From Magallana gigas (taxonomy: Eukaryota): a stretch of DNA of 64,000 nt. Shown piece after piece: positions 47,101 through 60,620 of the stretch (the first letter of the stretch is position 1; each line of letters starts with the position of its first letter). A program made the translations under genes and the position numbers. The DNA lies in NCBI RefSeq assembly GCF_963853765.1, contig NC_088854.1, positions 8,680,001 through 8,744,000 of the forward strand, given 5' to 3'. The notes under the pieces are model-generated. The model searched no databases, was not told the origin of the DNA, and saw only the letters and a program-made list of their open reading frames with translations.

Positions 47101-50100
47101 AATATTTGATTTCACAATCTAAAAACAAGTATATCCAACTTTTCTACTAAAAAACAATTTCTCTTTCATATTGAGCTGAAAACGGCAGAAGACTGTCTGA
47201 CTCGCATCAATTGCATATGATTGCATGCACAGTTGTAAAATGTTTTGTGAACAGTCATGAAGTCCATGATATTTTTTATTTGTATAAGTGTTCAAGGAAA
47301 GAATAACATCCCACTTTCATACAAATCATGTAACTTTGAAATATTAAAGATGATTCTTTTTAATCAATGAAACTGCCTTACCTGAACTTGGAATAAAATA
47401 ACCAAAACATGGTGGTACTTTATTGGATGAGTTCATTTCTGAAGGAAGTTTTTACAGGGCATGTGACATTTTTGTCTGTCTATAATCTCTAAATATAGCG
47501 ACTTGCATTTTTAGCTATATGTACTTAGATTACAACTTTTGTAATGGGGTGGTAAACAAGATGGGTCCAATAACAGAGGGATATCAGTTACGTACAGGAA
47601 TATGATCTAGCTATTAAATGAATACATTATATAATATATATAAGTTTATTTCATGTGATCAAGTTTTACATGATAATGTTTGAAAAATAGGTAAAAGATA
47701 TGTATGTGATATTGTAAGTACATTTAATTTTGTGTATAATATCTATATTAATATTTTGTATTATTTATCCCATGAGATAAGATTATATACAGCAAAGACT
47801 GCAAATTATACCATTATTTATCCTTTTCTGCATAATGACTGGATTAAACCTGTTTGTCAGTCCAAACTTCTTTCAGGATATTTTTTTGTTGTGCTTGTTA
47901 ACATTAGTCATTTTCATGCCAAAATGATATCTTTAGATGGGTATATATAATTTTTTATTCCCCCCCCCCCCCCTCTAAGAAGGGAAAGCATATTGCTTTG
48001 CTGCTGTCTGTCCACCAACAGTTTCAACTCATTTTCTTTGCAGAGGATGAACATATTGAAATGAAATTTGGTATACAGGTTTATCATGATAATATCTAGG
48101 TCAACTTCGATATTGGGTACGATCAAGCAATTTTCGACAGAGTTATGGCCCTTGGACTTAGAAAAATTCCAGTTTTTTGCAGTTTCCGCTCATTTTCTTT
48201 GCAGAGGATGAACATGTACATTGAAATGAAATTTGGTATACAGGTTTATCATGATAATATCTAGGTCAAGTGTGATATTGGGTACGATCAAGCAATTTTC
48301 GACAGAGTTATGGCCCTTGGACTTAGAAAAATTCCAGTTTTTTGCAGTTTCCGCTCATTTTCTTAGCAAAGGATGTACATATTGAAATAAAATTTGGTAT
48401 ACAGATTTATCATGATAATATCTAGGTCAACTTCGATATTGGGTACGATCAAGCAATTTTCGACAGAGTTATGGCCCTTGGACTTAGAAAAATTCCAGTT
48501 TTTTGCAGTTTCCGCTCATTTTCTTTGCAGAGGATGAACATATACATTGAAATGAAATTTGGTATACAGGTTTATAATGATAATATCTAGGACGAGTTCG
48601 ATATTGGGTACAATCGAGCAATTTTCAACAGAGTTATGGCTCTTGGACCTAGAAAAATTCCAGTGATTTGCAGTTTCTGCTCATTTTCTTCGCAGAGGTG
48701 CACATATTGATATGAAATTTGGTATACAGGTTTATCATGATAATATCTAGGTCAAATTTGATTTTGGGTATGATAGAGCAATTTTCGACAGAGTTATGCC
48801 CCTTGGACATAGAAAAATTCTCAATATTGGCATTTTACATTCATTTATTTGTGGATGTTTCCAAGGGAGGGGGGGGGGGCACATAAGTGTTTCACAAACA
48901 TCTCTTGTTAGTATTGCTTTCTAAAGCAAAGCACTTTTCCTTAACATGTACCATGCCATTTTTACAATATCATGCTTAAATTTCAGGACAGAATAATATC
49001 CCTGTCATTGATTACAGACAACAGACAGGGGATAGACAGGTAAAATATCTTAATTGATGATTTCTTCAAAATAGGAACATGTTATTTGAGATTTTCATTA
49101 TATGTTAACCTTGAATAAGCTATAACTTTATCATGATAACCCAAAATTAAACTACATTTAGTAACAACTGGAAAAGTTGAGAGTATTCGATACAAACAGT
49201 GTGTAATGCTTAAAGACAATGACCTTAGGTGTTCTTCACTGTAAATATTTTATTTTTGCTTTGATTTCAAAATTGATTTGCAATATTTAAAGCAAAGCAA
49301 TCTTTTTTCTTCAAGTTCAAAAAGTGAATAATTAAGTATTTCTTCTGAATTCATGAGTGTCAACTTTACACTGTACCCTTATTTCAACAGAGAGATGACC
49401 TACAGGCTACATATGTTGTGTCAAGGTCAGATGATCTGTGGAATTCTCATAGAAACCAACCTCTCCCACTGAATTATGATGAGCCAGATTGCTTGGATCC
49501 CCGACAGAGAATAGATGTGGATCCTAGTGATGTTGATCCCAGGGAAGTCGACCATTTCTCAGACGACAGCTCCAGGATACAGTGCCTCAATGGTAAATCT
49601 AAATCACACAGCAGAGCAATTCCTGCCAGGAATTGATCTGGGCCACAACATTTTGATTTTTACACATATTTAATTAAAATGGCGCAGTTTAGCAAACTGT
49701 CTGGGTACTAAGATAAAAAGAACATACAAAGAACTAACATAGATATTATTCGTTGTAAAGTGACTGAAACGGATATGCAACTAAACTGCTAATTTGTAAA
49801 AGTACATTTATTAGTCATGTGCACTTAAATCAGGTTATTACCGGTAAATGCTTATTGTGATGTTCGTAAAAATATTACATTATCCAGTGTGTGTGTGATA
49901 ATACTACAAATCGATTTTGTAATGTGTAGTCCAATACATTTCATCAATGACTATATTGATATTTAATTGTACAGTTGCTGAAAGTTATAAAAATTTAAGT
50001 TATAAGGAATCATTCTTTGATTATTATGAGGTGATCAAATATGGTTGGGCAAGATCAAATCTATCATAAAGCCTTTGGGCTTCATCTTCGATCATATTTG

Positions 50101-53065
50101 ATCACCTCATAATACACAAAGAATGACTTTTTATTCCTTAAGACAATGATTGTGAAGACATGACCTCCAAGTAAATTCTCGCAATCAACTTTCTGATCTT
50201 TCTTTGATCATTTGATAAGAAAGATGTACATGTAGTTGATGATTATGAAACAACCCATTCCAATGAAAATTAAATGAATCACTTCAAGTAATTAAAGTCT
50301 AGTATCAAACACTTACCGGTAAGGAACTGTTCTTAAGTTTCAATCATCCTAAATAGATGTAGCTTCGTGGTCATACACCCTGCAAAAAATTACAATGTGA
50401 AAAGAATGCTGCAACTTGTGGTACCCGGTATATCGATACAACTTGTCAAATTCTGAAAGTACTAAATATTTTAATTCAACTTTCCTAAATTTTAGAGACA
50501 TACAAGGACGTCTTGTCCTTGTTTGGTCCAGATGAGGAGGAGGAAATCAGTGATGCAGAAACATTGACCACTTCCTCGGACAGTGAGGAAAGTTTGGATG
50601 ACGACTTTGAGGACCTGACTTACAACCTGAGCTCATCAGAGGAGTCAGACAAAGACCAGGTAAAAAAAAAAAAAAAAGCTCCTCAGACGTGTTAGACAAA
50701 GAAAAGGTACACAACTAAGCTCCTTGGAGTCAGAACACAAATTTGCTTTCCTCAGAGTTGACAGGGAAAGTACAGTAACTGAGATCCTAAGAAAAGTCAA
50801 TAAAGGGATGTAAAAAGTAATGACAAGTTAAAGCCCTCTTTTATTCTGTATTGAATCAAACTTTATAAAAATGATTCACAAGGTTTAAGACATTAAATGA
50901 CAGTAGAATTTGTTTCTTATATTTCACAGAATATTTATGTTACTTAAGTCTATCTCTTTCATATTTTCTAGTATATTTATTTGCAAATTAAAAAAAAAAA
51001 TGATTCAAGACTAATAGATTTTAATTTTTCTTAGACTTGCAGGCCAAGGGAGATGAGAAGGGGTTACCATGGGGATTTACAAAGCAGTCCAAGAATGGAG
51101 TCTTATTTCGCATCCTCAGAGGACAGCTCTGGTTATCATAGCTCAGAAATCCAGTCCAGTCTAATCAAAAGAAGCCAAATCCACAAACAGTACCGCCAAC
51201 CTGAAACCAACATCAGCTACCGGCAGATTCAAAACCACTTCCTGTCTGGTGACGCAGGCTTAGTGAGCATGAAACGCCCCAATTACCGTCAACAAATTCA
51301 GAACCTGTACAAGTCAAGTAGCAGAGAAAATTCAGGGAAGTCTGATAGAGACCTTGAAAAGAAACAGAGGGGAAGAAATTCTCTGTGCTTAGATGAATTT
51401 GAAGCTTCATTTAAAATGTCTCAGAGTATGATGACAAATGGAGCTTCAGAATATTGCAGTCAACCAGAACTTAAAGTAGGAACTCCGGGACTGAGCAATC
51501 AGCCTATGTCTTCCATTGAAAAGGTTACAAAGTGGATTTTGCCACCTCAGGAAGGGGGTGGAATAGACAGATACACTGTGAAGGCCAAGCGGAAACTTTC
51601 CATTCAGAAAGTGCCAGAATCAAGTGCAGAGAGTTTCAATAGAGAGAGTGAGCTATCTTCAATTGTGTCTAGTTCTTGTGGAAATTCTACCATCACCACA
51701 GAGAACTTATTACACCAAAATCAGATGAGGAATACTGAGTTTGATCAAGAAAGCATGTCAATAGGATGTAACAGTGTCAATTGTTTTTGTCAAAACAGAG
51801 GTGTTTGTAACTGTACAGATTGTGTTAACAAGTGTGACTCAAGGCAGCCTCAGCAGTTTGGAGATGATGATTGTGATAGTGGAGAAAGTATTTCTCAGTA
51901 TAATGAGTTTGGAAGTAGAAGTAGGACTTCAATGACATTTGCTTGTCCTTCAGGGGGTAATAATTCAGCATACAGTTTTCCACCTCAAGCTATTCCACTT
52001 TCACCAAGAACATCCACTGAAATATCAACATACCGACCTCAGCCAAGAACATTTACTGAAATATCCACATACCAACCCCAACCAAGAACATCCACTGAAA
52101 TATCCACATACCAACCTCAGCCAAGAATATTTACTGAAATATCCACATACCAACCCCAACCTAGAACATCCTCTAAAATATCCGCGTCCCAACCCCAACC
52201 AAAAACCTCTTTCTTTTCTCCCCAGAGAGCTCACAGTTGCCCGTCATCTCCACAGTCTGTTGGACTGTTTCCTGATCCGAGCAGCTCTCCGTCTTCATCA
52301 CTGGCAAGACTTCGCCTCTCCTCACCCAGATCTTCACCCAAAGCGTCACAAAACTATTACAGAAGACAGGCTGTGGAGGAGCACTCACCCCGCATACAGG
52401 CAACATGCAATGTTCCACCGGTATTCAAAGTTCCAAATGCTTTTCCATATGAAAGATCTCCATCAACCAAAAGAGTTTCACAAAGAACACTGATAGATGA
52501 AGGGGAAGGAGGACAGCAGCAGGTTGAAAGGGCTCGAGATAAGCATGTGAGGTCGAACTCTTGTGACAACAGGTCAAATCGTAGATTTAGATCTCAATTT
52601 AATGACAAGCCTGATTGGATGAATTTTGATGGACAGTATCGAGTTTTCCATAGAAAAAATCTGGATAGCAGTCTTTCAAGAAGAGTTTGTGGTGAATATC
52701 AACAAGAAGAAATGGAGAGTGGACAACAACTGAAAACTGGCTATCCTCTCCAGTCACTGCCCAGAGAACTTGTGTCTGTCGGAAAGACCAAGCCTAAGTG
52801 TTTAGGAAGCTTATTTTCACCCCAGAGGCCCAGTTTCACTCTCAAAAATAGAGACACGCGTAATGAAATGATCTCAGATAGGGGGGATCACTGGAACCAA
52901 ACTAGGCAAGAGCATTCAAAGATTTCATCCGAGATTCCATGTCGCAAGAACTTACAAAGCACACCAAAGAAAAGGAACTGTGAACTTGTACTAGACACTT
53001 CTCTTTCAACTATTAATCCAAATGTAGATAGTTCAAGTGATGAAGATGAAGTCATTTTAATTTAA
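44114..53065 (+). CDS. About 896-aa mostly disordered protein with an N-terminal Scm3/HJURP-like (CENP-A chaperone) motif, 7 exons
   Basis: Exons 44114-44197, 44308-44374, 46662-46751, 48987-49039, 49391-49592, 50496-50659 and 51035-53065 all have GT-AG ends with matching phases (0,1,1,0,1,0). The N-terminus reads MAGALKYMSDHENRLQRFKSNLLYIFDKYENCEDDDTEIDLRDLSLHRGRKQFIRSKTKGFG. Gene model confidence is high; family assignment is moderate. Confidence 0.7.
45092..46007. mobile_element. Kolobok-like non-autonomous DNA element with TTAA target duplication, containing a nested MITE
   Basis: Ends ttaaaggga... and ...tcctttaa. The two flanks rejoin as gagg-ttaa-tagacacttg, matching the local repeat unit gagg-gtaa-cagacccttg. 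Confidence 0.6.
45251..45416. mobile_element. pogo/Tigger-type MITE nested in the element above
   Basis: Left end ta-cagtcaaactttgatatctcg versus right end cgagatatcgaagttcaactg-ta. Confidence 0.7.
46085..46325. repeat. Degenerate tandem repeat of about 60 bp (aaacagggtaacaagggttacgagggtaacagacccttgtat)
   Basis: About 4 copies, plus an interrupted copy at 45066-45091. Confidence 0.75.
47950..48909 (-). mobile_element. HINE-like element in reverse orientation carrying a third satellite of about 165 bp (x5)
   Basis: Right end is ...catctcttgtt (aacaagag on the minus strand), left end tttta plus a hairpin-like GC stretch and gtct microsatellite remnant; the monomer gaaatgaaatttggtatacaggtttatcatgataatatctagg recurs about every 165 bp. 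Confidence 0.75.
50003..50140. repeat. Long imperfect hairpin element
   Basis: aggaatcattctttg..tattatgaggtgatcaaatatg / catatttgatcacctcataata..caaagaatga..ttcct are inverted arms with a central aagcc-tttg-ggctt stem-loop. Confidence 0.75.
52004..52210 (+). repeat. Coding 39-bp tandem repeat x5 (PRTSTEISTYQPQ)
   Basis: Visible in both DNA and translation of the large final exon. Confidence 0.9.
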
Positions 53066-53614
53066 GGAATTGTTTTTCATTCTAGTGAAAGTATTGCAAA
53101 ATGAAATTACTGCTGAAATAAATCATGTTGAAACCATCAGGTGTTTTTTGTTTTCTTTTATCATCGACTATAAAATGACTTTTCTTTAATAGGTAGTAAA
53201 GCTGCCCATCTCTAAGTGACTGTAATTTATATGTAGTTAAATACTTTCATCCACAATAAAATTTCAAGATGTCACTTACCATTCTAAATTAATTGGAAGT
53301 CTTGTATTTCAAAAAGTTTATTGTGTAACTTAAAATTTTTAAAGGAGGTACATGAGTCTTTAGAAATTTGTTTTTAAAATAGTTAAAATGTTTTTATCCT
53401 AACAGAAAAATTTAAATGAAGCTAGAGTTGTTTCCCTTAGAGCTGCATCAAGTTTAAATGTCCTGACAGTGTTATATATAGCAACAGAATAAACAGAGTT
53501 ATGATATTGGTAAGAACACACAATGCCAAAATGGACTCTCATTTTGAAATGACTGGGACTGTGTAGTGGCCTTCAACAGAGACAGTAATGTGACACAAGT
53601 AAAAGTATCATGCA

Positions 53615-55522
53615 ATGGGCTGTTCCTGTTCCTCGAACTCGGGTATGAAGTAATCTATATTGTATTGATTGGCAGTTATATCTGTATTGATTGGCAGTTA
53701 TATCATACATCCCAATACTGACTTACTTGTGTAATTTTTGAGTGACTTTTGTTTGTATAAATTTCCAAATGAGTAACACTGAAAATGTAAATGTTTATAC
53801 ATTTAGATACCAGGTAATTAAATAATGGAATGGTTGTAATTCATATTTGAAAATAGCTAGAATACTTTAGACAAGTACAAAATGTTACATATATGTATAT
53901 TGAAGTAGCACCGTAAATAATTGATCATTTCCATGTATTTTGTGTTTACCCCATGTATTTTGGTTGTCTTTTTTCTGAATACCGGTAACTCCTTTATTCA
54001 TATAATTATGTAAACATACATAATGCATTTGTTCTGTAGATCCCACAGTTCCTCGTCCAGCAATGAACTCTTACCCCCGCAGTCAGGGAGTTGAAACAAG
54101 GTGGATACAGCCAGGTAAATGGGCATGTAACAGGACCAGCAAATACTCCCCAGTCCACACCCCACCCCCAAAAAAGTCCCCCTCCCAATGAGATCAGCCT
54201 TTTTTAAAATTTTCCCAATAATATAATGATTTTAGGGACTTGGAGTATGATATTATATATGTTTGTAGTTATCCATATGTTTAATTGTCTCTTATTAAAT
54301 ACAGTTCCACATAAACACAGTTTTAATCTCGAGTATAAACTTTGCCTTTAAATGGTAGATGTAATCTAGGTGACACAATCCCTACAACAATCCTTTTGAT
54401 TATATTGAGAGAAGAAGCATTGAACATTTCCTACTGGTAGATATTTAAAGAACAAACAAACATGTTTTAAAATCTTTTTTGATATTGTTTCGTTTATGAA
54501 ATAATTAAAATTTGAGTCAACACAAATTCTAACAAAATAAATTTGTAACAACTGAGTCTTGAAACTTCTCAACATTGATCAATGTTGTATCAAAAATTAA
54601 TCATAGAAATTAATATACCAGGTTTGCGCTTTGCTTATATCAGATTGAGACTAATTTTGATTATGGCAAGAGAAAAAAAGGTTTTTTAAATGCACAGACT
54701 GTACATTCATGTATGTTTGAATGTTTTTCTTCTTCCTGGTTTCAGATCAACCTATGACCTTGCCTCCATCTGGGCACAATATAAGAAACAGCAGAAATGA
54801 AGATATGGTTATAGCAGGTTTGTTACCCTTCATGTGGGCTTTTTGTGTTTAATCCGAAGTGTTTAGGGTAAATCCAGTTGATTGCAGCTTTTATACCCCC
54901 AACCCCCTCCTTTTTGAGTTAAATAGCTGAAATGTAAAAGTTTGTGATAATGGAATGCTTTGATTTATCAATGATATATTTTTGTTCGTGATTTATGCAG
55001 TAACTAAGGTCGCAATATTGGAGAGGAAATACATAACTGGTACATGTATAAGCATGTGATGTAATTTTATTCTGCAATGATTTCTACCTTCATAACCTGC
55101 ATGAATCATCAAAGAAAGCATTTTATTGTTTATATTTACTTTTTTCTTTTAACAAAATTGTTAATGTACATCAATACGTTAGATAGAAGAAATAGCCAAT
55201 TATTCTTACATGGGAATTAGAGTCTGGGGCATCAACTTGAATATTTCCTACAGTCTGTGAAATTGTTTTTAGCCTGCTGAAGGTTTCAACCGACCAATAA
55301 ACTGGTTAGAACTGGATCATGTATATTTCAGCCCTGTCAGTTTTTCTAGAGCTCAGTGAATGTAAATATTACACATATTTCAAATTATTTGTCAGTTTTA
55401 CATAGCGGCAATTTTTTTCTATTTTAGCGGCGGCAATGATGCATCATGGGGGTTATGGACACATGCATGGATTCGGTCCAAGACTGTACAACCCCATGGA
55501 AGGAGATTATGGACTTCTGTGA
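53615..55522 (+). CDS. 89-aa microprotein with an N-terminal MGCSCSS acylation motif, 4 exons
   Basis: Exons 53615-53642, 54040-54114, 54746-54817 and 55428-55522 are all phase 1 with canonical sites. They give MGCSCSSNSDPTVPRPAMNSYPRSQGVETRWIQPDQPMTLPPSGHNIRNSRNEDMVIAAAAMMHHGGYGHMHGFGPRLYNPMEGDYGLL*; AATAAA overlaps the stop. Confidence 0.7.
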
Positions 55523-58500
55523 ATAAACAACCTTTAATAAACATGCTTACAAGCTGAAGCATATTGCAAATTACCTCAGAACATCATATGTATCATGTTA
55601 TATAGAAAGATTTATAATACGTTACATGGATCATGCAGTCACCCACATAACTGGAAATGGCAATGCATTCTTACTAATTTGTTTCGAACAATCATGTGTT
55701 ATTTGCATCATGAATACTGGTAGATTTAATTTGATATGAGTTAGCAATTATTTGAGATTATGTAAGTCTTAACTTTCTTTTGATTTACCATATTTTTTGT
55801 TGTGGCAATAACTGAATGTTATTGAAAAATATTTTTCAATATGATATTATTTGCAGTATGTATGTGTCAAGTTTTCAACATTGATCAGTATTAAAATCAT
55901 GTTTTGACATGAAAGATGGAATTCAAAATTCAACACACAATATGGAATTTATAGATTAACACAGTAATTAAATACCAATGTGACATGAGAAATGATAAAT
56001 ATTATGATGCTGACAACATATAGAGCTATTTGATATATCCAAATCAACACCTGTACTTTAGCACATCAAACCTTTGTTGTGATTAAAGCCCATTTGCTAG
56101 TAATATATATTATAACAATGTGTAAGGTTGACAGAACAGAAATACCTGTCTTGTTTATGTCAAATTATGTAACTGCAGTCTGACAATCACGTGTTGTGTT
56201 AGCTAGTCTCTAAAAAATGACGGGAAAAATTATAAACCATTCCTTGATGCAAAGCTGTCTTATTTCTTTTACATTTATTTCTGTTTTCAATGAAGAATAC
56301 TTAAAACAGTTACATATGTTTTCTTTCTTTCATTTGATTTAAGTTTTGGGTTTTTTTTTATATATCAGGCTTACAAGTTATTCAATTAACATATGGACTC
56401 AATGTCTACCAAAGTTGTTCAAGTATAACCTGGGTTGGGGAAGTTTATGCTTTATGCTGAACAATATGTGTTAGACATTAAAGTTATGAAAGAAAAAGTG
56501 AATAAAATTGTTGAGGGTTTTTTTTTGTTACTTCTGGAGAAAGTTTGTCCAAAGATGTAGATTTACCACCCATTTTCAGTTTTTCTTATATCAATTTTTT
56601 GAGTTTTTGTTGTTGAAAAAAGAAAAATATTAGACTCTGTATAATTAATCTGTTATCATGAGTTTTTCTGGATTAAAGTGTGTAGGTCCATTTCATATGT
56701 ATCACTGACCTTGCTCAGGTAATTATAAAAGGTCATGGTCATACAGGTAATGAGGTATCTTGTCCTTTTGCTATGAATCATGGTTGCCATTATAATTGTC
56801 TTAATTTCTCCACATAGCATTCCAATAATGTCTTGGGGATAAAATTGATATCTGCATATCGGGAGTTTTTTAATATGAAAATTGAGAATCATTGGATGCT
56901 CCTTGTTGGATGCTTTCATATTTTAATAGGAAGCTATCTTCAATCTCTTGGATCTAACAGGCTTTGATAATTTGTATTTACGCAGTACTGTATCTTTTTT
57001 TTTTAATACCGGTATTTGAGAAGATGAATGAATTTGAGATCCAGAATAAGACAGATATTAGATGACTATAAACATTAATGGTAATTCATCGGACCAATCA
57101 AAAACAGCAGAAAGAGAGTAATGTTTTAAAATCAATGTAATATAAAATCTCAACAAAAAAATAGATTATGTAAACTTTCAATGTTATCAGTAGAGAAATG
57201 TCTGTCTTGAAGATATTGCCCAGGATGGTTTAATAAGATCATATCCAAGAGGTTGAATATTTCATTTTTTATATCTCCCTCTCAAAAAAAAAATATAATT
57301 ACATTTATTTCATAATGTATGTTCACATATTGGCAAGATGCCAAAAATTTTCATTCTTTTGACTTTGGATATAAAGAGGGGTGCCTTTAACTAGCCTGCA
57401 CATCAATCAAACATTGTGAATTGTAAAATGCCTTTTCATATGCTGAGTTTAATTAAAGGAATAAGCCATGCAAGAACACATTTTGTATCCTACAACAGTT
57501 TTTGCATTGGCATGGGTTACAGCAATGATCCATCATTATCACATGGAATGAAAAGTTCACTTGGAAGTGGGTAATGTTAACTGTATACTTAAATGATGAT
57601 TTCTTCAAGAATACCGGTAGATAGCTTGAAGGTTAGATGAAGAATTAAACTCGGTTCAGATATGAAATACCAACTGATGCGTATATTCATACACATATAT
57701 GTCAGAGCCCAATTAATTGTCTTCCCTCTCAATAGTCAGAAAATAAATGTTATTTATATATATGTGAAGGACGGTCTAAGTGCTGATGTTTTTGTTTGTG
57801 AATGATATTGCTGTGTTGGTCTATTAGTACAGGCACCTGTTGCTTACAGACATAAGTTCCTTACCCTTCTGCCACCACTGAACTTTGGTTGCAGGTCAAG
57901 AGCCTCAGTTTGGAATTAACCCAGGTTTTAATGCATTAACTCTGAAGAAAGGATGTTCACTTGAGGAAATAAGACAGTTATGGGGGGTTTTAATTTCAAT
58001 TTTGTGTTTGTTGATACATATATGTATAAAGCGTTGTTGAATGAATAATGTATATAATTACTCTTGTACATGAACATTGTACAAAAATAGGTGATTGCAA
58101 TTTTTATACTAGCTTAATACAGATGCATGTACATACACAAATAAACCAAAAAACCCATCATTTTCCAGCTTAAGTTCATTGAGGCATTCAATCCATGAGT
58201 CGATCATTCAGGCAATTTAATAAAACAAATCAATAAGTTCATCTTTAGGTCAACAAATAGAGTAGCAGAATGATCTTGGTTGCTTTGCTTTAATAAGGCA
58301 AACTTGATTTAAACAGTCATTTAAAAGAGGCCTGTGGGTCTTATCACTCACTTGGGTAACAGTTGTACTTCTTAAATTCAGCTCCATTTGTTGTTGATAC
58401 CTTGCCTTTGAGGAGTTGGAACAGCTAGAGGTTTCATGTTTGGTGTAACTGAGGTTTAATGATACCAAAGAATAACTTGAAATGAACTGTATTAAAATTT

Positions 58501-59129
58501 ATAAGACCTAGCGCTGTTTACATAGGATCACTATAGTATATCATTATAACTAAGGTGATGAGTTATGGTACACTGAAAAGGTGATATAAGAAGTCAAAAG
58601 TTTCATTACTAGGGAGAAAATGCTTGGTAAATTAAAATTTACTCTTCAAGATGCATTAATTGTCAATTTCAGCTGGGTGGACTGAGACAATATACTACTC
58701 ACTCAGATAAAGTGCCTTGTCTCAGGTCACAGCTCAGAACACCAAATGACCACAGCGGTGCTTACACCAGCGACATTTGGGTTATCGCCTATGGCAACTA
58801 AGCTTTGTGCTCTCAAGATGCATTAAAATAAAGGAAAAGTCATCAATTGTTAGAGCAGCAATGAAAAGTTGGAGGTTTTCTCCTTGTAGGAAGATATAAA
58901 GGAAGAATGAAACATATTTAGTGTCATGTTTTACCAACTGTGAGATGGTGAGAGATGTTGATAATCTATTCAGATGTGGTGTAGACAGAGTTTCATTCTC
59001 TAGGCATGACATAAAGACAGAGGATCATTCTTTAGCTACATGGGATTGAAGTTAGGGTCATACAATAGCAGCACCACTGAGATAATAGATAGTAACTCTC
59101 TAAAAGCAAAGTATATCTAGAGGTTATCC

Positions 59130-60620
59130 TCTAGCAATGAGATGTAAACAGCTAGAACCATGAAATAAAAACAAAGGATTATTTTCCAGCCATGAGGTGG
59201 AGAACAAAGGTTCATTTTCCCTCTCTCCATGAGTAAAAAACCATGGTTCATTGACTCTAGCCGTAAGGTGAAGACGGGTTTATTTTCTAGCCATGAGATG
59301 AAGACAAAGGTTAATATTTTGGCCATGAGATAAAGATGAAGGTTCATTCTCTAGCCATATGTTAAAGATAGAGGTTCATTCACTAGTCGTTAGATGAAGA
59401 TGCAGGCCCCTTCTATAGCAATGAGGTGAGGACGGAGGTTCATTCTCTAAATTTATGGGATGAAGATCGAGGTTCATTCACTAGCCATGAGATAAAGATT
59501 AAAGTTAAGTTTCTAGAAATGAAGTGAAGATGGAAAGATAGAGGTTCATTCTCTAGCCATCAGGAAAGGATGGATGCTCTTTCTCTAACCATGAGGTGAA
59601 GATTAATGTTCATGCTCTAGCTATAAGGTGAAAAAGGAGGTTCATTCTGACGATGGAGGTTCATTCTCTAGCCATGAGGTGGAGACAGAGGAGACACTGA
59701 GGTAACAGTGGCTAACTCTAGCAGTAAGGTGGATACAGAGCTATCCTTGATGTGAAGATGGGGGTTCATTTTCAATCCATTATAGATAAAAACAGAGAGT
59801 TTTTTAGTCTAGTCATGAGGTGAGGATGGAGGTTCATTTTCTAGCTATGAGGTGAAGAGTGGGGTTCATTCTCTAGCCATAAGGTAAAAATCAAGGTTCA
59901 TTCTAATGATGGAGGTTCATTCTCTAACCATAGGGTTAAGAGTGAGCTTCATATTTTATTCATAAGGTGAAGGGTGTAAATGGAGGTTCATTCTCTAGTT
60001 ATGATGTGAGGATCGAGGTTCATTCTCTAGCTATGAGGTGTAGATGGAATTTCATTCTCTAGCAATGAGGTGAAGAGTGAGGTTCATTCTCTAGCTATGA
60101 GGTGAAGATTAATGTTCATTCTCTAGCCATAAGGCAAACATGGAGATTCATTCTAACAATGGAGGTTCATTCTCTAGTCATGAGTTGAGGATGGAGGTTC
60201 ATTCTCTAGCTATGAGGTGAATAGTGAGGTTCATTCTCTAGCTATAAGTTGTAGATGGAAGTTCCTTCTCTAGCCATGAGGTGAAGATTAATGTTCATTC
60301 TCTAGCCATTAGGTGAAAATGGAGGTTCATTCTGACGATGGAGGTTCATTCTCTAGCCATGAGGTGAAAATGGAGGTTCATTCTGACGATGGAGGTTCAT
60401 TCTCTAGCCATGAGGTGGAGACAGAGGAGACACTGAGGTAACAGTGGCTAACTCTAGCAGTAAGGTGGATACAGAGCTATCCTTGATGTGAAGATGGGGG
60501 TTCATTTTCAATCCATTATAGATAAAAACAAAGAGTTTCATATTAATAGTTCTAGCCATGAGGAGATTAGAGACAGGTTCATTCACAAGCCGTAGCAATG
60601 AGGTAACAGAGGTTAACTTA
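59130..60620. repeat. Degenerate minisatellite of about 31 bp (gatggaggttcattctctagccatgaggtgaa) with an internal higher-order duplication
   Basis: More than 40 degenerate units; block about 59645-59805 is repeated almost exactly at about 60385-60540. Confidence 0.88.

What the first reader, a model, noticed from the sequence alone, without database searches (positions are those of the whole stretch)
53615..55522. Unannotated-looking 89-aa microprotein with an Lck-like dual-acylation N-terminus
Seen: four small phase-1 exons, none in the ORF track, splice to MGCSCSSNSD... and end in a His/Gly/Met/Tyr-rich tail (MMHHGGYGHMHGFG); AATAAA overlaps the stop codon. Established: MGCxCS is the myristoyl plus palmitoyl SH4 motif (Lck begins MGCGCSS). 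Inference: a small raft-anchored disordered adaptor or metal-binding peptide with no family I recognise. Three consecutive in-phase junctions plus the motif are unlikely to be chance.
Basis: partly seen in the sequence, partly recalled or inferred. Interest (0 to 1): 0.7.

Follow-up and report, generated by a model that had tools for sequence, protein, structure and literature searches.

The report
Conserved lipid-anchored oyster microprotein gene
This is a real, separately transcribed four-exon oyster gene for an 89-residue disordered protein under strong purifying selection, whose conserved Met-Gly-Cys start predicts a fatty-acid membrane anchor; it is already in databases as an uncharacterised protein and has no known family.

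Summary
Four phase-1 exons (53615-53642, 54040-54114, 54746-54817, 55428-55522, + strand) splice to a 270-nt CDS of 89 aa. All three junctions appear in RNA contigs from three studies, and the third also in stranded raw reads. The transcript (about 53501 to 56472 or beyond) is separate from the upstream gene.

It is coding. dN/dS is 0.04-0.05 against Ostrea edulis and against another oyster, and 0.14 between two distant relatives. Only the CDS exons align between species. Intron positions, phases and the upstream neighbour are conserved.

- The gene is not unannotated. The identical protein is UniRef A0A8W8KQQ9 (Magallana gigas), and O. edulis has XP_048778331.1; both are "uncharacterized".
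- The AATAAA over the stop is not the main poly(A) site; the 3'UTR is about 1 kb.
- The Lck-like second Cys and the His-rich tail are oyster-specific.

Family-wide invariants are Gly2 with Cys3 or Cys4 (the PROSITE N-myristoylation pattern is met in all five lineages), DPxVP, NxYPR, a short hydrophobic VIxAxA segment and a C-terminal YxxPhi. There is no Pfam or PDB hit and no paralogue, and the protein is predicted disordered.

Best reading: a myristoylated and palmitoylated, membrane-tethered disordered adaptor, comparable in kind to calcimembrin. Acylation and function are inferred, not shown. Interest is modest.

The parts
53473..53480 (+). TATA-like box (TATATATA), about 27 nt upstream of the most 5' RNA contig end
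   Evidence: Sequence read. X2 contig record 2 begins at 53501. Depth is zero at 53155-53456 in all four runs. Promoter function is inferred.
53501..53614 (+). 5'UTR (minimum extent); it holds several upstream ATGs
   Evidence: RNA contigs begin at 53501 (X2), 53520 (X8) and 53542 (X3). The sequence was printed.
53610..53612 (+). Out-of-frame upstream ATG, 5 nt before the main ATG; it opens a 19-codon overlapping uORF that ends in exon 2
   Evidence: Read directly. The same -5 out-of-frame ATG is in the related oyster transcript L001.
53615..53642 (+). Coding exon 1: Met-Gly-Cys-Ser-Cys-Ser-Ser-Asn-Ser plus 1 nt (phase 1). The start context gcaATGG has a purine at -3 and G at +4
   Evidence: Junction 53642|54040 is in contigs of X2, X3 and X8.
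53643..54039 (+). Intron 1 (397 nt, GT..AG, GC 0.275); contains a perfect 22-nt tandem duplication at 53661-53704
54040..54114 (+). Coding exon 2 (75 nt): conserved DPxVP and NxYPR motifs
   Evidence: Aligns to O. edulis L004:10975-11049.
54115..54745 (+). Intron 2 (631 nt, GT..AG)
   Evidence: Its position and phase are conserved in O. edulis and in a distant relative (L013).
54746..54817 (+). Coding exon 3 (72 nt)
   Evidence: 82% nt identity to O. edulis L004:14245-14331.
54818..55427 (+). Intron 3 (610 nt, GT..AG); holds a dispersed repeat at about 54967-55268
55428..55522 (+). Coding exon 4: hydrophobic AAAMM stretch, His/Gly-rich stretch, GPxxYNP, C-terminal GDYGLL and the TGA stop
   Evidence: Aligns to O. 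edulis L004:17058-17146.
55523..56472 (+). 3'UTR (minimum extent, about 950 nt). Candidate poly(A) signals follow it: ATTAAA 56477-56482 and AATAAA 56501-56506
   Evidence: X3 contig record 8 runs 55426-56472 and X8 record 14 runs 55426-56341. X21 raw-read depth continues to about 56476 with the first mate on the minus strand. Sequence. The exact 3' end was not observed.

Best explanation
This is an independent, TATA-associated, four-exon protein-coding gene of the Pacific oyster. Its mRNA is about 1.3-1.4 kb and it encodes an 89-residue, intrinsically disordered microprotein.

Proposed mechanism. After removal of the initiator Met, Gly2 is N-myristoylated co-translationally. The adjacent Cys3 (plus Cys5 in Magallana/Crassostrea) is then S-palmitoylated, which fixes the peptide to the cytosolic face of a membrane. 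From there the disordered chain presents a few conserved short motifs to partner proteins: DPxVP, NxYPR, a 9-residue hydrophobic helix-prone VIxAxA segment, GPxx(Y/H)NP, and a C-terminal G-x-Y-x-x-hydrophobic motif that fits the YxxPhi sorting-signal pattern. It would therefore act as a small membrane-tethered adaptor or regulator.

Shown here: the gene structure, transcription, splicing, strand, coding constraint, conservation of the acylation consensus, absence of a fold, and absence of a family.

Inferred: that acylation actually occurs, where the protein localises, and that it has an adaptor role.
For: Splicing and independence:
- All three junctions are in RNA contigs of X2, X3 and X8 (three studies) and in raw stranded poly(A) reads of X21.
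- Contigs of the upstream gene stop at 53086-53110, and depth is zero at 53155-53456.

Coding constraint:
- dN/dS is 0.047 against O. edulis.
- dN/dS is 0.039 against a second oyster, with differences by codon position of 4/1/30.
- dN/dS is 0.138 between two distant relatives.
- Only the CDS exons align at nucleotide level between species.

Orthology:
- The O. edulis locus has the same four phase-1 exons and the same upstream neighbour.
- The positions and phases of introns 2 and 3 are conserved in a distant relative.
- The gene is single-copy in its own genome.

Acylation signal:
- M1, G2 and a Cys at 3 or 4 are invariant across 10 sequences, although residues 4-9 vary.
- The PROSITE PS00008 pattern is met at the N-terminus of all five lineages.
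- Every Met-Gly start has a purine at -3 and G at +4.

Disorder and lack of family:
- AF2 with the alignment gives mean pLDDT 49.8, with only a low-confidence helix at 52-67.
- The ESM Atlas model has pLDDT 0.31.
- The maximum 19-residue hydropathy is 0.46, so there is no TM segment.
- There is no Pfam hit and no PDB hit.

Motif: a C-terminal YxxPhi is the only known-type motif conserved in all five lineages.
Against: - No direct evidence of translation (no Ribo-seq or peptide data) or of lipidation.
- The 5'UTR has upstream ATGs, including an out-of-frame one 5 nt before the start with A at -3, which could reduce initiation at the Met-Gly codon.
- The O. edulis RefSeq model begins three codons earlier (MNN-MGC), which would bury Gly2 if that ATG were used. 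Its context (T at -3, A at +4) is weak.
- The PS00008 pattern is permissive.
- None of the conserved internal motifs matches a characterised ligand motif, so the partner and the compartment are unknown.
- The taxa of the two distant relatives could not be identified.
Confidence: 0.68

Rival explanations
1. The exons are non-coding: a spliced lncRNA, or the untranslated tail of the upstream gene, and the ORF is there by chance.
For: The ORF is short. The 5'UTR carries upstream ATGs. There is no protein-level evidence.
Against: dN/dS is 0.04-0.14 in three independent comparisons, with most differences at third codon positions. Conservation is confined to the CDS exons. The frame, length and intron phases are kept in five lineages. 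Upstream-gene contigs end at 53086-53110, followed by a zero-depth gap.
Confidence: 0.02
2. It is a real coding microprotein but is not lipidated. It would be a soluble cytosolic or nuclear disordered peptide, and the Met-Gly-Cys start is conserved for another reason, or initiation occurs elsewhere.
For: The O. edulis model has an in-frame ATG three codons upstream. An out-of-frame uATG sits at -5 in two oysters. PS00008 is a low-specificity pattern.
Against: Gly2 plus an adjacent Cys is invariant while the neighbouring residues vary. The Met-Gly ATG has the strong context in every species, and the extra O. edulis ATG has a weak one. The distant relatives have no in-frame upstream ATG next to the start.
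Confidence: 0.15
3. Its main role is metal (Zn/Cu/Ni) or pH sensing through the His/Met/Gly-rich tail, as a hisactophilin-like myristoyl-histidine switch or a small metal buffer.
For: MMHHGGYGHMHG in M. gigas and LMHYGGHHHG in O. edulis. Oysters handle large Zn and Cu loads (general knowledge).
Against: Only one His of this stretch is conserved in the distant relatives (…LLSHGGFGVPG…), and total His is 4-6 of 87-89 residues. There is no fold, unlike the beta-trefoil of hisactophilin.
Confidence: 0.07
4. It is a membrane-embedded micropeptide. The conserved VIxAxA(L/M)(L/M) segment inserts as a short in-plane helix or a hairpin and modulates a channel, pump or transporter, as sarcolipin-type micropeptides do.
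For: This segment is the only predicted helix (52-67) and the most hydrophobic 9-mer in all five lineages (KD 2.4-2.6). It is strongly conserved.
Against: The hydrophobic run is only about 9 residues. The maximum 19-residue hydropathy is 0.36-1.26, below the usual threshold for a TM segment. The helix has low confidence (pLDDT about 50).
Confidence: 0.08

Closest known systems
Calcimembrin / C16orf74 (human; PMC12612047)
   Same: A short, intrinsically disordered microprotein that is N-myristoylated at Gly2 and S-acylated on nearby Cys, and that works by presenting short linear motifs at a membrane (paper read). This is the same kind of architecture and the same proposed mode of action.
   Different: No sequence similarity was detected. 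The defining composite LxVPxIxIT calcineurin motif is absent in all five lineages. The acylated Cys residues are at 3/5 here, not at 7/14.
SH4 region of Src-family kinases (Lck MGCGCSS, Fyn MGCVQC) and Galpha-i/o N-termini (MGC...); these sequences are recalled from memory
   Same: Met-Gly-Cys start with Ser or Gly at position 6, which is the classic myristoyl-Gly2 plus palmitoyl-Cys3 signal. The M. gigas form MGCSCSS resembles Lck closely.
   Different: There are no SH3, SH2 or kinase domains and no G-protein domain. The whole protein is 89 aa and disordered. The second Cys is not conserved beyond Magallana/Crassostrea. The resemblance is a convergent signal, not homology.
LAMTOR1/p18 (Ragulator anchor; N-terminus MGCCYSS recalled from memory)
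   Same: A dual-acylated N-terminus followed by disordered sequence that carries sorting motifs. The distant relative's MGSCYSAS start is very similar.
   Different: No Pfam LAMTOR hit even at E <= 10. It is about half the length of LAMTOR1 and lacks the helices that wrap the Ragulator roadblock dimers (only one weak helix).
Hisactophilin (Dictyostelium myristoyl-histidine pH switch)
   Same: A myristoylated small protein with a His-rich sequence (in the oyster forms only).
   Different: Hisactophilin is a folded beta-trefoil in which about a quarter of the residues are His. Here His makes up 4-6 of 87-89 residues, is mostly not conserved, and no fold is predicted.

Membership tests
N-myristoylated proteins (NMT substrates) | Gly at position 2 after the initiator Met, and the PROSITE PS00008 pattern G-{EDRKHPFYW}-x(2)-[STAGCN]-{P} | tested here: met
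   The pattern matches at the N-terminus in all five lineages. M1 and G2 are invariant in 10 sequences.
N-myristoylated proteins (NMT substrates) | Myristate is actually attached | not testable with these tools
   This needs metabolic labelling or mass spectrometry.
Dual-acylated (myristoyl + palmitoyl) N-termini, SH4/Galpha-i type | Cys within about 3 residues of the myristoylated Gly | tested here: met
   Cys3 in the oysters and in L007, and Cys4 in L005.
Lck-type SH4 (MGCxCS, two palmitoyl Cys) | A second Cys at position 5, conserved | tested here: not met
   Present only in Magallana/Crassostrea-like sequences. It is Ala in O. edulis and absent in L005 and L007.
Src-family kinases | SH3-SH2-kinase domains after the SH4 region | tested here: not met
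   The protein is 89 aa in total, with no Pfam domain.
Calcimembrin / C16orf74 | Composite LxVPxIxIT calcineurin-docking motif | tested here: not met
   Regex scans for LxVP and for a relaxed PxIxIT found nothing in any of the five lineages.
Calcimembrin / C16orf74 | Detectable sequence homology | tested here: not met
   The exhaustive profile search and the word-seeded searches returned only family members, fragments of them and two repetitive proteins (P0016, P0018) judged spurious; none was identified as a vertebrate protein.
LAMTOR1 | Match to the Pfam LAMTOR family | tested here: not met
   No Pfam family at E <= 10.
Single-pass or tail-anchored membrane micropeptides | A hydrophobic segment of about 18 residues or more | tested here: not met
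   Maximum 19-residue Kyte-Doolittle mean is 0.36-1.26. The hydrophobic core is 9 residues.
YxxPhi tyrosine-based sorting signals | Y-x-x-[LMVIF] in a cytosol-exposed, unstructured segment, conserved | tested here: met
   YGLL, YGDV or YGDM within the last 5 residues in all five lineages. Binding to AP mu subunits was not tested.

The most novel reading that the evidence does not exclude
This gene is the founding, so far undescribed member of a mollusc-restricted family of dual-lipidated, disordered microproteins of about 87-89 aa. Their conserved motifs (DPxVP, NxYPR, VIxAxA, and GPxxxNPxxGxYGxPhi at the C-terminus) would recruit a specific, still unknown partner to a membrane and use the C-terminal YxxPhi for endosomal or lysosomal sorting. 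That would make it a lophotrochozoan counterpart, by convergence, of vertebrate lipidated microprotein scaffolds such as calcimembrin.
Probability: 0.4. Interest if true: 0.45.

Novelty: new member of a known kind. Interest (0 to 1): 0.33.

Why it matters
Microproteins under 100 residues are under-annotated and rarely characterised in molluscs. Here is one with unusually clean evidence: spliced transcripts in several studies, dN/dS of about 0.04, and conserved intron phases and synteny. It also carries a conserved lipid-anchor signal but has no known family, which gives oyster cell biologists a compact, testable membrane-adaptor candidate.

The finding is not a surprise in kind. Dual-acylated disordered microproteins are known, and the gene is already present in public annotation as an uncharacterised protein. 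The value lies in the curated model, the family definition and the separation of family-wide features from oyster-specific ones.

Tried and rejected
Searches that found nothing:
- Rfam scan of 50000-60000: no RNA family.
- Pfam on P0001 and P0002 at E <= 10: nothing.
- PDB profile search: only a chance tail-fibre hit at E 0.65.
- ESM Atlas feature search with P0005 and P0020: no usable hit. The structure-based rows rest on a pLDDT 0.31 model and are meaningless.
- JGI metagenome scan with the family alignment: 100 pattern matches, none confirmed.
- Paper search for the run, assembly, gene and protein accessions: 0 papers. The species behind P0001 (SRR326223xx), P0020/P0021 (ERZ272292xx-293xx) and P0023 (SRR138917xx-8xx) therefore remain unidentified.

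Look-ups and hits set aside:
- The look-up of encoding contigs for P0002 found nothing because only the longest isoform is on record. P0015 gave the locus.
- Exhaustive-search hits P0016 and P0018 are repetitive proteins, judged spurious by inspection of their sequences. P0003, P0004, P0017, P0019, P0022 and P0024 are single-exon read-throughs of genomic or unspliced contigs, not separate family members.

Ideas considered and rejected:
- A calcineurin-docking (LxVP/PxIxIT) reading prompted by calcimembrin: motifs absent.
- DxxLL GGA-type and PDZ-ligand C-termini: each is present in only part of the family.
- A transmembrane reading: hydropathy is too low.

Method notes:
- My first exon-3 end (54818) broke the frame; this was corrected.
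- The 89-aa query was typed from the output. From then on the identical stored protein P0005 was used.
- Complex prediction was not used because there is no candidate partner.

Full report
**1. The observation**

Reading 53000-56200 and splicing by script gives four + strand coding exons:
- 53615-53642
- 54040-54114
- 54746-54817
- 55428-55522

All are bordered by GT..AG and all junctions are phase 1. They make a 270-nt CDS and an 89-aa product that starts MGCSCSS and ends GDYGLL. Exon 3 must end at 54817; my first attempt with 54818 broke the frame. Exon GC is 0.49 against 0.28-0.32 in the three introns.

**2. Transcription and splicing**

The run search identified the organism as an oyster. 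RNA libraries held about a quarter of the words of the 2.3-kb stretch, which is what a spliced mRNA would give. Four runs were laid on 52400-56900.

- All three predicted junctions are present in assembled RNA contigs of X2, X3 and X8, which come from three different studies: skips of 397, 631 and 610 nt. The last two, and the first in X8, are reported as GT..AG; for the 397-nt skip the X2 and X3 contigs are cut two letters off (ends GG..GT).
- Junction 3 is also in three raw reads of the poly(A) library X21.
- Single contigs carry the whole mRNA: X8 record 14 (1178 nt) covers 53520-53641, 54039-54111, 54743-54815 and 55426-56341. X3 record 8 (1294 nt) reaches 56472. An X2 contig begins at 53501.
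- In X21 the first mates lie on the minus strand, which in most stranded libraries means the RNA is from the + strand.
- Contigs of the upstream gene end at 53086-53110, and no run has any depth at 53155-53456.
- A TATATATA box at 53473-53480 sits about 27 nt before the most 5' contig end. Promoter function is inferred.
- The 3'UTR is at least 820-950 nt, so the AATAAA over the stop is not the main poly(A) signal. ATTAAA (56477-56482) and AATAAA (56501-56506) lie just past the last covered base.

**3. Is it coding?**

Protein searches and cluster look-ups gave the following:
- an identical 89-aa protein, P0005 = UniRef100_A0A8W8KQQ9, 'Uncharacterized protein', Magallana gigas;
- a set of 93-99% variants from transcriptome assemblies;
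- Ostrea edulis XP_048778331.1 (LOC125682005 isoform X2), 75-78% identical;
- two distant relatives of 87 aa, about 40-44% identical: P0020/P0021 from ENA assemblies, and P0023 from Logan assemblies. P0023's listed C-terminal extension is a gene-caller read-through of TGA.

Evidence for orthology and a conserved gene structure:
- The O. edulis locus (L004) has the same four exons with the same phases, but introns of about 3 kb.
- Its upstream neighbour matches the 670-aa exon that lies upstream in the window, at 31-41% identity over two segments.
- A genomic contig of the distant lineage (L013) shows exon 3 with both intron positions and phases conserved.

Evidence for purifying selection:

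| Comparison | dN/dS | Note |
|---|---|---|
| M. gigas vs O. edulis | 0.047 | dS saturated |
| M. gigas vs oyster of L001 | 0.039 | differences by codon position 4/1/30 |
| L005 vs L007 (distant relatives) | 0.138 | |

. At nucleotide level only the CDS exons align between M. gigas and O. edulis, and only the CDS aligns between L005 and L007; UTRs and introns do not. The gene is single-copy in its own genome. Together this is strong evidence for a translated ORF under purifying selection.

**4. What the family conserves**

Across 10 sequences the invariant positions, in M. gigas numbering, are:
- M1, G2 and a Cys at 3 or 4;
- D10-P11-x-V13-P14;
- N19-x-Y21-P22-R23;
- V56-I57-x-A59-x-A61;
- G66 and G69;
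- G75-P76;
- N80-P81;
- G84-x-Y86-G87.

Residues 4-9 vary while Gly2 and the Cys do not. The PROSITE N-myristoylation pattern is met at the N-terminus of all five lineages.

Every Met-Gly ATG has a purine at -3 and G at +4. The extra in-frame ATG that makes the O. edulis model start MNN-MGC has T at -3 and A at +4, so leaky scanning to the Met-Gly codon is plausible.

Two features are lineage-specific. The second Cys (C5), which makes the start look like Lck, is confined to Magallana/Crassostrea-type sequences. The His/Met/Gly/Tyr-rich stretch is confined to oysters: the distant relatives keep one His and the Gly residues.

**5. Fold and family**

- No Pfam family at E <= 10.
- No PDB relative.
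- No ESM Atlas neighbour.
- AlphaFold2 with the family alignment gives mean pLDDT 49.8 and pTM 0.14. The only element is a low-confidence helix at 52-67 over the hydrophobic VIAAAAMM stretch. The Atlas model has pLDDT 0.31.
- There is no transmembrane segment: the maximum 19-residue hydropathy is 0.46, and the hydrophobic core is 9 residues.
- About 65% of residues are polar or disorder-promoting.

**6. Mechanism**

The best-supported reading is a cytosolic-face, lipid-anchored disordered microprotein. Met removal and N-myristoylation of Gly2 would be followed by S-palmitoylation of Cys3 (and Cys5 in M. gigas). This is established biochemistry for Met-Gly-Cys N-termini such as Galpha-i and Src-family kinases, which I state from general knowledge. 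The rest of the chain would then act through short conserved motifs.

This is the pattern of tyrosine-based sorting signals, so endosomal or lysosomal trafficking is a testable guess.

Motifs found in only part of the family, or not at all, are discounted: LxVP, PxIxIT, SH3 class I/II, WW, EH, PTB, clathrin-box, acidic di-Leu, GGA DxxLL and PDZ patterns.

Acylation, localisation and partners are all inferred; nothing here shows them.

**7. Comparison with what is known**

The nearest described kind is calcimembrin/C16orf74, a disordered microprotein shown to be myristoylated and S-acylated, which recruits calcineurin to membranes through a composite LxVPxIxIT motif (PMC12612047). The oyster family shares that architecture but neither the motif nor any sequence similarity. 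It is an analogue, not a member.

It is also not a Src-family protein (no domains), not LAMTOR1 (no Pfam hit, and only one weak predicted helix in an otherwise disordered 89 aa) and not hisactophilin-like (no fold, few conserved His).

**8. Verdict**

The gene model and its coding nature are confirmed. The acylation reading is strengthened by conservation. The 'unannotated', 'Lck-like', 'metal-binding tail' and 'AATAAA at the stop' points are corrected.

It is a new, uncharacterised family of a known kind. It is a worthwhile candidate for mollusc cell biology, but it is not surprising in principle.

Noticed in passing
window 54967-55268 (intron 3): A dispersed repeat. RNA-contig word depth jumps to 1,250-1,640 in X2 (about 125-555 in X3 and X8), with many loose ends at 55084-55138. 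An own-genome search gave 2,107 first-look candidates, and many loci matched on both strands, as a MITE-like or palindromic element would.
   Followed up: partly
window 53610-53612: An out-of-frame upstream ATG lies 5 nt before the main start (A at -3) and opens a 19-codon uORF that overlaps the CDS. The same -5 arrangement is in the related oyster transcript L001 (ATGTCATGG against ATGCAATGG). It may be a conserved translational damper.
   Followed up: partly
window 53661-53704 (intron 1): A perfect 22-nt tandem duplication, TGTATTGATTGGCAGTTATATC x2.
   Followed up: no
window 51053-53065: A 670-aa open exon of the upstream gene. It is Ser/Pro-rich, has internal TEISTYQPQPRT-type repeats and no Pfam domain. 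Its orthologue is the upstream neighbour in O. edulis, 31-41% identical over two segments.
   Followed up: partly
L004:10869-11049 (O. edulis): RefSeq isoform X1 (P0015, 113 aa) replaces exon 1 with a hydrophobic 5' extension of exon 2 that is not conserved in any other species. It is either an alternative promoter or an annotation artefact, and it lacks the Met-Gly-Cys start.
   Followed up: no
L007-L009; P0023, P0017: The gene callers behind the Logan and ENA records read TGA as Trp. This gives spurious C-terminal extensions (…GDMF-W-IL, …GLL-W-HPL…). The true products end at the TGA.
   Followed up: yes
window 53615-54039: An X2 contig (record 3, 417 nt, depth 8 against 19 for the spliced form) runs through intron 1 with several small indels. 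It could be unspliced pre-mRNA, an intron-retaining isoform, or DNA carry-over from a different haplotype.
   Followed up: no
window 55464: A polymorphism, T>C, in the X2 contig changes Met71 to Thr. It matches the cluster variant P0008 (…GHTHG…). The other three exon-4 SNPs (55462, 55474, 55516) are synonymous.
   Followed up: partly
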